The notes under the pieces: model-generated
The model's database searches: none
What the model saw: the letters and a program-made list of their open reading frames with translations, nothing else
What the model was told of the DNA's origin: nothing
Program-made: the position numbers and the translations under genes
Source: Gracilinanus agilis
Lineage: Eukaryota
Assembly: GCF_016433145.1 (NCBI RefSeq)
Contig: NC_058131.1
Location: 485,677,229 to 485,741,228 of the forward strand
DNA: 64,000 bases
Direction: 5' to 3'
Part shown: piece by piece, positions 26,785 to 27,446 of the stretch
How positions within the stretch are numbered: the stretch's first letter is position 1
Layout of the letters: each line of letters starts with the position of its first letter

Positions 26785-26970
26785 TTCTATTGCCATCACA
26801 ATTGTTTGTGTGTGTGTGTGTGTGCTTATGTGTCACATTTCTTTGTGACGGTGTGCCATGTCCTGATGTTTTGTTATCCTTGCTCTCCCTGCTCTCCTCT
26901 CTTTTGCCGCCTCCATGGTGGACGTCTTTGTTACCTCTGCTTAATCGGACCTTCCACTTCATTTCTATAG
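26785..26970 (+). promoter_or_regulatory. Extended 3' splice-site region of the 12-nt exon
   Basis: 184 nt without AG (26785-26968); (TG)9; CTGAT 26863-26867; YGCY-rich pyrimidine tract; TGCTTAAT 26938-26945. Confidence 0.7.
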
Positions 26971-26982
26971 GTAGAAGTAAAG
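26971..26982 (+). CDS. NRXN3: NRXN3 SS1 microexon, 12 nt, phase 1-1, (G)RSK
   Basis: cttccacttcatttctatag|GTAGAAGTAAAG|gtagag. GRSK is visible in track ORF 26709..27068. The donor is weak but order and peptide fit SS1. Confidence 0.85.
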
Positions 26983-27446
26983 GTAGAGATCACTTTATTT
27001 TTATTATTATAACTATTGATCTGCTTTTTTCAATTATTCATGTGTCCAGGGGGAATTGTTCATTCTGATATATGTAGAATAGACCGGAACTTAAAGCTTT
27101 TAAAGATAACTAAAAAAATAATAAAAAGACCAATCCTGTTGTCTGTCTTTAATGTGCCTTGGATTTATATAGACAGGGATGTCCCAGAAGCTTGACTCCC
27201 ATTACAACTTGATAGTGCTTTACCCACTCTTTCTTACCTATTCCTAGGAAAGAAGTGGGTCATACAGGTAATGAGCACATTGTGGCTTCAGATACTAGGG
27301 GAGGGGAAGTACATTTTATGTGCAAAGGGGAGCTTTATAGTAACTGAGGTAACAGGATAACCAAGATAGAGAAGGGATTAGGGTGGGGAGTGGAGATATG
27401 AATTGATTTTGCATTGTTTGAATTGCATGGGGATTGTTGAACTTTG

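What the first reader, a model, noticed from the sequence alone, without database searches (positions are those of the whole stretch)
26965..26988. Three in-frame donor-like hexamers at the 12-nt exon: possible 0/6/12-nt choice or recursive splicing
Seen: ctatag|GTAGAA GTAAAG GTAGAG, three GTARAR hexamers at 6-nt spacing starting at the acceptor. After splicing to the 30-nt exon (ending AAG) the junction becomes AAG|GTAGAA, nearly identical to the genuine donor AAG|GTAGAG. Established: recursive-splice exons in long neuronal genes regenerate a 5' splice site after the first step. Inference: GRSK skipping may occur by re-splicing (zero-length exon), and a 6-nt GR isoform via GAA|GTAAAG may exist; every outcome keeps frame.
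Basis: partly seen in the sequence, partly recalled or inferred. Interest (0 to 1): 0.7.

Follow-up and report, generated by a model that had tools for sequence, protein, structure and literature searches.

The report
Donor-like triplet at neurexin-3 microexon
A 12-base brain-type mini-exon of the opossum neurexin-3 gene begins with letters that, once it is joined to the exon before it, rebuild a splice signal about as good as its own, so it could in principle be cut out again after being spliced in; this mechanism is already known for other exons, and I could not test here whether it is used.

Summary
GTAGAA, GTAAAG and GTAGAG sit head to tail at 26971-26988, straight after the acceptor AG (26969-70). 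This triple occurs once in the window and in 0 of 300 shuffles.

It is the 12-nt, phase 1-1 microexon (G-R-S-K) that closes the neurexin-3 SS1 insert, after an 18-nt exon (2698-2715) and a 30-nt exon (23887-23916).

By my proxy scores:
- The regenerated junction donor AAG|GTAGAA equals the real donor AAG|GTAGAG: same U1 duplex energy, 4.2 versus 5.1 bits.
- Both are weak, near the 10th-15th percentile.
- The middle donor GAA|GTAAAG is clearly weaker.

The short upstream intron (3 kb) and long downstream intron (over 37 kb) also fit a putative recursive-splice exon as defined by Blazquez 2018. The Ubx microexons are the closest analogue.

Whether re-splicing or a 6-nt form occurs could not be tested. 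No paper searched links NRXN3 SS1 to recursive splicing.

Given the peptide, 2-4% of synonymous spellings place both extra GTs.

Verdict: a real, ordinary neural microexon with untested recursive potential. Re-splicing appreciable about 0.3; 6-nt form about 0.1. Moderate-to-low interest.

The parts
2698..2715 (+). 18-nt microexon, first of the three SS1 insert exons (phase 1-1, ends CAG, donor CAG|GTGAGT)
   Evidence: Read. Donor scores 13.0 bits and -12.2 kcal/mol. AG-free zone of 114 nt and a long pyrimidine tract upstream. Lead came from scan note s1-176216.
23887..23916 (+). 30-nt microexon (phase 1-1, reads G-L-S-H-L-M-M-S-E-Q, ends CAAG, donor AAG|GTAGGT)
   Evidence: Donor scores 9.9 bits and -10.3 kcal/mol. 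AG-free zone of 82 nt.
26785..26970 (+). 3' splice-site region of the 12-nt exon: a 184-nt AG-free zone, a pyrimidine-rich block about 60-100 nt upstream, TGC motifs at -32, -65, -80 and -89, a branch-point-like TTAAT with its A at 26944 (-27), and the acceptor AG at 26969-70
   Evidence: sequence read.
26971..26982 (+). 12-nt microexon GTAGAAGTAAAG (phase 1-1, G-R-S-K), last exon of the SS1 insert
26971..26976 (+). Hexamer 1, GTAGAA. It becomes a donor only after the upstream exon is joined (AAG| or CAG|GTAGAA), making it a putative recursive 5' splice site
   Evidence: 4.19 or 4.94 bits, U1 duplex -6.5 or -8.0 kcal/mol. About the 10th-14th percentile of model donors.
26977..26982 (+). Hexamer 2, GTAAAG. 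An internal donor-like site (GAA|GTAAAG) that would give a 6-nt exon
   Evidence: 2.86 bits, U1 duplex -3.8 kcal/mol. About the 5th percentile.
26983..26988 (+). Hexamer 3, GTAGAG. The exon's own weak donor (AAG|GTAGAG)
   Evidence: 5.10 bits, -6.5 kcal/mol. About the 15th percentile.
26993..27020 (+). U-rich tract starting 11 nt into the downstream intron. A possible binding site for a U-rich-binding activator of weak donors (inference), and the 3' arm of the hairpin
   Evidence: T fraction 0.57 over +7..+46. Sequence.
26976..27005 (+). Predicted 13-bp A/G : U stem (26976-26988 with 26993-27005, loop 26989-26992) covering hexamers 2 and 3
   Evidence: -12.5 kcal/mol for 61 nt, z -1.74, 10 of 200 shuffles as good (marginal). 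The stem persists in the centroid of the 161-nt fold.

Best explanation
This is the 12-nt neuron-type cassette microexon that ends the neurexin-3 SS1 insert in an opossum. The three hexamers are the in-frame spelling of Gly-Arg and Ser-Lys, followed by the exon's own weak donor. Together they form a degenerate 6-nt triple whose copies differ only by A/G changes. I think inclusion is mainly decided in the usual way for microexons, by whether the acceptor is recognised. The acceptor region has a long AG-free, pyrimidine- and UGC-rich upstream stretch. Once it is recognised, the 3-kb upstream intron goes first and the part-spliced RNA waits for a far-off acceptor. U1 can then sit in only one of three overlapping registers. 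The true donor is favoured by the U-rich tract just downstream. The junction donor, which is equally strong on paper, may give a minor re-splicing route to the skipped mRNA. The middle donor is essentially unused. Shown here: the anatomy, the relative strengths and the intron geometry. Inferred: everything about actual usage.
For: Exon, phase and hexamers. All three microexons have long AG-free zones and pyrimidine tracts, and a TGC lies at -32. The donor is weak beside its neighbours: 5.1 vs 9.9 and 13.0 bits. About 10% of all plus-strand GTs in the window score as high as the junction donor, so such scores lie in the decoy range. The coding null gives 2-4%. Zhang 2018 found that cassette exons with AGGT mostly do not act as RS exons. 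No RS report for NRXN3 SS1 was found.
Against: The junction donor equals the true donor in U1 pairing and differs only at +6. Blazquez 2018 states that the relative strength of the RS donor decides whether an RS-exon is alternative, that upstream-intron-first order favours RS, and that EJC factors are low in brain. All of these conditions apply here. In a 12-nt exon all three donors lie within the about 15 nt where the EJC was shown to repress donors, so the EJC cannot easily single out the true one.
Confidence: 0.5

Rival explanations
1. First reader's main idea. The microexon is an expressed recursive-splice exon. It is spliced to the 30-nt (or 18-nt) exon first, and a sizeable share (10% or more) of the skipped mRNA then arises by re-splicing from the regenerated donor at 26971. 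The balance would be set by competition with the equal donor at 26983 and by EJC loading.
For: Regenerated donor AAG|GTAGAA, or CAG|GTAGAA, is as strong as the real donor. Upstream intron is 3 kb, downstream over 37 kb. This fits the definition and the favouring conditions in Blazquez 2018. It parallels the Ubx m1/m2 microexons. Three consecutive microexons (18/30/12 nt) could crowd EJC deposition at -24 (inference).
Against: There is no read, lariat or literature evidence. The proxy score sits at the borderline of the 90%-of-donors threshold used to call RS-exons, and true MaxEntScan was not available. Zhang 2018 concluded that most AGGT cassette exons are not RS exons.
Confidence: 0.3
2. A 6-nt isoform (Gly-Arg plus a changed next residue) is made by using GAA|GTAAAG at 26977, giving a three-way 0/6/12-nt choice.
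For: A GT lies in frame 6 nt into the exon. Blazquez 2018 showed that a donor moved 6 nt into an exon yields a 6-nt microexon from part-spliced reporters.
Against: The site has no G at -1 or +5. It scores 2.9 bits (about the 5th percentile) and its U1 duplex is -3.8 vs -6.5 kcal/mol, which is roughly 80-fold lower predicted occupancy. The Blazquez sites used had MaxEnt of at least 5.52. The site lies inside the predicted stem.
Confidence: 0.1
3. The first two hexamers are never used as donors but act as RNA elements. They could be extra U1 landing registers or a purine-rich enhancer (AGAAG) that helps define a tiny exon, or one arm of a hairpin with the U-rich tract that tunes access to the weak donor.
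For: Purine-rich exon. A 13-bp stem is predicted between 26976-26988 and 26993-27005 and recurs in the centroid of the larger fold. The weak donor needs help.
Against: The stem is only marginal (z -1.74, 10 of 200 shuffles) and shows no signal at 161 nt (z -0.04). No covariation test was possible. The motif assignments are from memory.
Confidence: 0.15

Closest known systems
Annotated RS-exons repressed by the exon junction complex (Blazquez et al. 2018, PMC6224609)
   Same: The exon starts with GT, so the exon-exon junction rebuilds a 5' splice site. The exon has a weak donor of its own and an upstream-intron-first geometry. An internal donor a few nt in could give a shorter microexon.
   Different: Those exons are mostly constitutive and of normal length, and were found in HeLa cells. 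The microexon screen there used host exons of at least 21 nt. Here the host exon is itself only 12 nt, so all donors lie in the EJC-repressed zone. Usage was not shown here, and NRXN genes are absent from their tables.
Drosophila Ubx microexons m1/m2 (Hatton 1998, as described in PMC8605326)
   Same: In-frame, conserved coding microexons in a long intron that begin with a regenerated donor. Inclusion or skipping is chosen between the ratchet-point donor and the exon's own donor.
   Different: Those exons are 51 nt rather than 12 nt, and are from fly. They were validated by mutagenesis; here nothing is validated.
Vertebrate deep-intronic recursive sites (Sibley 2015; Zhang 2018, PMC6110456)
   Same: An AG|GT motif inside a very long neuronal gene, with a conserved acceptor.
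   Different: Those RS exons are cryptic, low-PSI and mostly carry stop codons. This one is a coding, frame-keeping cassette exon. Zhang's table lists one human NRXN3 candidate site, 23,176 nt into a 479-kb intron, but I could not show that it is this exon.
Neural microexons dependent on SRRM4/nSR100-type recognition
   Same: Length 12 nt, a multiple of three, a synaptic adhesion gene, UGC motifs and a strong pyrimidine region upstream, and a weak donor.
   Different: Neuron-specific inclusion and SRRM4 dependence were not tested here.

Membership tests
Putative RS-exon (Blazquez 2018) | [quoted passage not shown] | tested here: met
   AAG|GTAGAA after the 30-nt exon and CAG|GTAGAA after the 18-nt exon.
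Putative RS-exon (Blazquez 2018) | RS donor MaxEntScan at or above the score reached by 90% of canonical donors (5.52 in human) | tested here: inconclusive
   MaxEntScan is not installed. A proxy weight matrix built from recalled frequencies puts the site at the 9.8th percentile (13.7th with C at -3), which is right at the threshold.
Functional RS-exon | The upstream intron is removed before the downstream one | not testable with these tools
   Geometry favours it (3.05 kb upstream vs over 37 kb downstream). No reads were available.
Functional RS-exon | Use of the regenerated donor shown by lariats, spliceosome footprints or mutation of the ratchet donor | not testable with these tools
No report was found in papers.
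Deep-intronic vertebrate RS site (Sibley/Zhang) | Cryptic, low-inclusion RS exon, usually with a premature stop codon; sawtooth read profile | tested here: not met
   The exon is in frame and coding, with no stop. The sawtooth profile was not testable.
Tandem alternative 5' splice sites | Two or more nearby in-frame GT donors, each seen in transcripts | tested here: inconclusive
   The motif is present at 6-nt spacing. Transcript use is unknown, and the middle site is weak.
Neural microexon | At most 27-30 nt, frame-preserving, with UGC near the acceptor and an extended pyrimidine region | tested here: met
   12 nt, phase 1-1, TGC at -32, -65, -80 and -89, and a 184-nt AG-free zone. Neuronal inclusion was not tested.
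Neurexin-3 SS1 insert | Ordered microexons that encode the SS1 linker between EGF-A and LNS2 of an alpha-neurexin | tested here: inconclusive
   The peptides match my recollection of the neurexin SS1 insert. Scan notes call the locus opossum NRXN3.

The most novel reading that the evidence does not exclude
NRXN3 SS1 output is set on the part-spliced RNA by a three-register donor ratchet (0, 6 or 12 nt). Because the exon is only 12 nt and follows 18- and 30-nt microexons, EJC loading is crowded and cannot tell the donors apart. EJC dosage and the U-rich hairpin would then tune the neurexin isoforms. The 18-nt array itself would have arisen by tandem duplication of a 6-nt donor unit.
Probability: 0.1. 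Interest if true: 0.6.

Novelty: new member of a known kind. Interest (0 to 1): 0.33.

Why it matters
Neurexin SS1 is one of the least understood splice sites of a major synapse organiser. If skipping of its last microexon went through re-splicing, its isoform ratio would depend on exon-junction-complex dosage. That dosage is low in brain and is linked to neurodevelopmental disease. It would also give a vertebrate counterpart of the Ubx microexons. If it does not, this is a normal microexon whose coding letters happen to look like donors.

Tried and rejected
- **Reads:** No runs were returned.
- **RNA families and repeats:** Rfam found no family in the window. TRF made no call on the 18-nt array.
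- **Look-alike exon:** a 28-nt look-alike of the 30-nt exon at 30339-30366 is frame-breaking, and its similarity is not significant (score reached by 2.8% of random pieces). Rejected.
- **Other AG|GT sites:** tcatag|GTGAGG at 61806 is the strongest regenerated donor in the window, but by eye it lies in a MIR-like repeat. Not pursued.
- **MicroExonator:** its Nrxn3 microexon is a different 27-nt exon.
- **Neurexin papers held:** none describes the SS1 donors. Treutlein 2014 and Südhof 2017 are not held.
- **Zhang 2018 candidate:** the human NRXN3 RS candidate could not be tied to this exon. From my recollection of the human gene layout and the gene length beyond this window, it more likely lies in a more distal intron.

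Full report
**What is there**

Reading the window shows ctatag at 26965-26970, with the acceptor AG at 26969-70. It is followed by GTAGAA (26971-76), GTAAAG (26977-82) and GTAGAG (26983-88). The first two hexamers are a 12-nt exon in phase 1-1 that reads G-R-S-K. The third is its donor.

Upstream lie two more microexons:
- A 30-nt exon at 23887-23916, which reads G-L-S-H-L-M-M-S-E-Q, ends in CAAG and has the donor AAG|GTAGGT.
- An 18-nt exon at 2698-2715, with the donor CAG|GTGAGT. The lead for this came from scan note s1-176216.

All three are in phase 1-1. From my knowledge of neurexins, these peptides are the SS1 insert of an alpha-neurexin, most like neurexin-3. Earlier scan notes call this genome an opossum and place NRXN3 intron sequence 1.45 Mb further on. 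I did not confirm the gene by a search of my own. The next constitutive exon is not in the window, so the downstream intron exceeds 37 kb.

**Is it more than chance?**

- (GTARAR)x3 occurs once in 64 kb on both strands, and in 0 of 300 shuffles. A tandem pair is expected 0.15 times.
- Given the peptide and phase, 12 of 288 synonymous spellings (4.2%; 2.4% usage-weighted) put GT at exon positions 1 and 7.
- The three copies differ only by A/G changes, and the third would read G-R again. This looks like a decayed 6-nt tandem triple, but TRF does not call it.

So the pattern is real and uncommon, but not decisive on its own.

**Strength of the three donors**

MaxEntScan is not installed. I used two proxies: a position-weight matrix built from recalled human donor frequencies, and ViennaRNA duplex energy with the 5' end of U1.

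| Site | Sequence | Bits | U1 duplex (kcal/mol) | Percentile of model donors |
|---|---|---|---|---|
| Junction after 30-nt exon | AAG\|GTAGAA | 4.19 | -6.5 | 9.8 |
| Junction after 18-nt exon | CAG\|GTAGAA | 4.94 | -8.0 | 13.7 |
| Middle site | GAA\|GTAAAG | 2.86 | -3.8 | 5.1 |
| True donor | AAG\|GTAGAG | 5.10 | -6.5 | 14.7 |
| 30-nt exon donor | AAG\|GTAGGT | 9.9 | -10.3 | not computed |
| 18-nt exon donor | CAG\|GTGAGT | 13.0 | -12.2 | not computed |

About 10% of all plus-strand GTs in the window reach the junction donor's score. The junction donor is therefore as good as the true one, both are weak, and the middle one is much weaker.

The only joined letters I built were 11-mers inside local scripts, to score the regenerated junction.

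**Surroundings**

- The 12-nt exon has a 184-nt AG-free zone.
- A pyrimidine-rich block lies 60-100 nt upstream.
- TGC motifs sit at -32, -65, -80 and -89.
- A branch-point-like TTAAT has its A at 26944.
- A U-rich tract starts 11 nt into the downstream intron.

The other two microexons have 114- and 82-nt AG-free zones. This is the usual build of regulated neural microexons.

A 13-bp A/G: U stem is predicted between 26976-26988 and 26993-27005. It is marginal: -12.5 kcal/mol, z -1.74, with 10 of 200 shuffles as good. There is no signal at 161 nt.

**Literature**

- **Blazquez 2018** defines putative RS-exons by a regenerated donor at or above the 90%-of-donors threshold. It shows that the EJC represses such donors, and also represses donors up to about 15 nt into an exon. 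A donor moved 6 nt in yields a 6-nt microexon from part-spliced RNA. RS needs the upstream intron to go first. EJC factor levels are low in brain. NRXN genes are not in its tables.
- **Ubx m1/m2** are in-frame microexons handled by this route.
- **Zhang 2018** concluded that most AGGT cassette exons are not RS exons. It lists one human NRXN3 candidate site, 23,176 nt into a 479-kb intron, with 3 unique junction reads. I could not establish whether that is this exon. From my recollection of the human gene layout and the gene length beyond this window, I think it is more likely a more distal intron.
- No held paper contains both 'recursive splicing' and NRXN3. The lariat-based set has no NRXN entry.

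**What could not be done**

Only local computations touched it (folding, TRF, scripts).
- As a result, cross-species conservation and transcript evidence are both missing.

**Reading**

The exon is a genuine neurexin-3 SS1 microexon. By sequence and intron geometry it qualifies as a putative RS-exon.

I judge ordinary cassette behaviour as most likely (0.5). In that case the choice is made at acceptor recognition, and the true donor is helped by the adjacent U-rich tract.

Appreciable re-splicing is a live rival (0.3). The two donors are equal, the upstream intron must go first, and in a 12-nt exon the EJC cannot separate them.

A 6-nt form is unlikely (0.1). It would also change the next residue, because the 6-nt exon ends in A rather than G.

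Noticed in passing
window 61783-61830: tcatag|GTGAGG at 61806 gives the strongest regenerated donor of all 268 plus-strand AGGT sites (11.6 bits) and has a fair pyrimidine tract. It lies 35 kb into the long intron after the 12-nt exon. By eye it sits in a MIR-like repeat, so it may be incidental.
   Followed up: partly
window 30339-30366: An acceptor-to-donor bounded 28-nt stretch shares ATGATGAG and the ttcctc(c)aagGC acceptor context with the 30-nt exon. It is frame-breaking, with a stop in phase 1. The similarity is not significant (2.8% of random pieces score as well).
   Followed up: yes
window 26976-27005: A predicted A/G : U hairpin buries the middle and true donors against the downstream U-rich tract. 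It is marginal (z -1.74).
   Followed up: partly
window 2590-2697, 23803-23886, 26785-26970: All three SS1 microexons have unusually long AG-free zones (114, 82 and 184 nt) with long pyrimidine runs, which suggests distant branch points or regulated acceptors.
   Followed up: partly
window 22100-22950: About 850 bases of TA-rich, imperfectly repeated sequence (tatatgtatgctatataa-like units) lie in the intron between the 18-nt and 30-nt exons.
   Followed up: no
window 13011-13140, 27447-27586, 40074-40205, 60351-60479: Four N runs of about 130-140 bases, plus a single N at 30290. I left them as they are.
   Followed up: no
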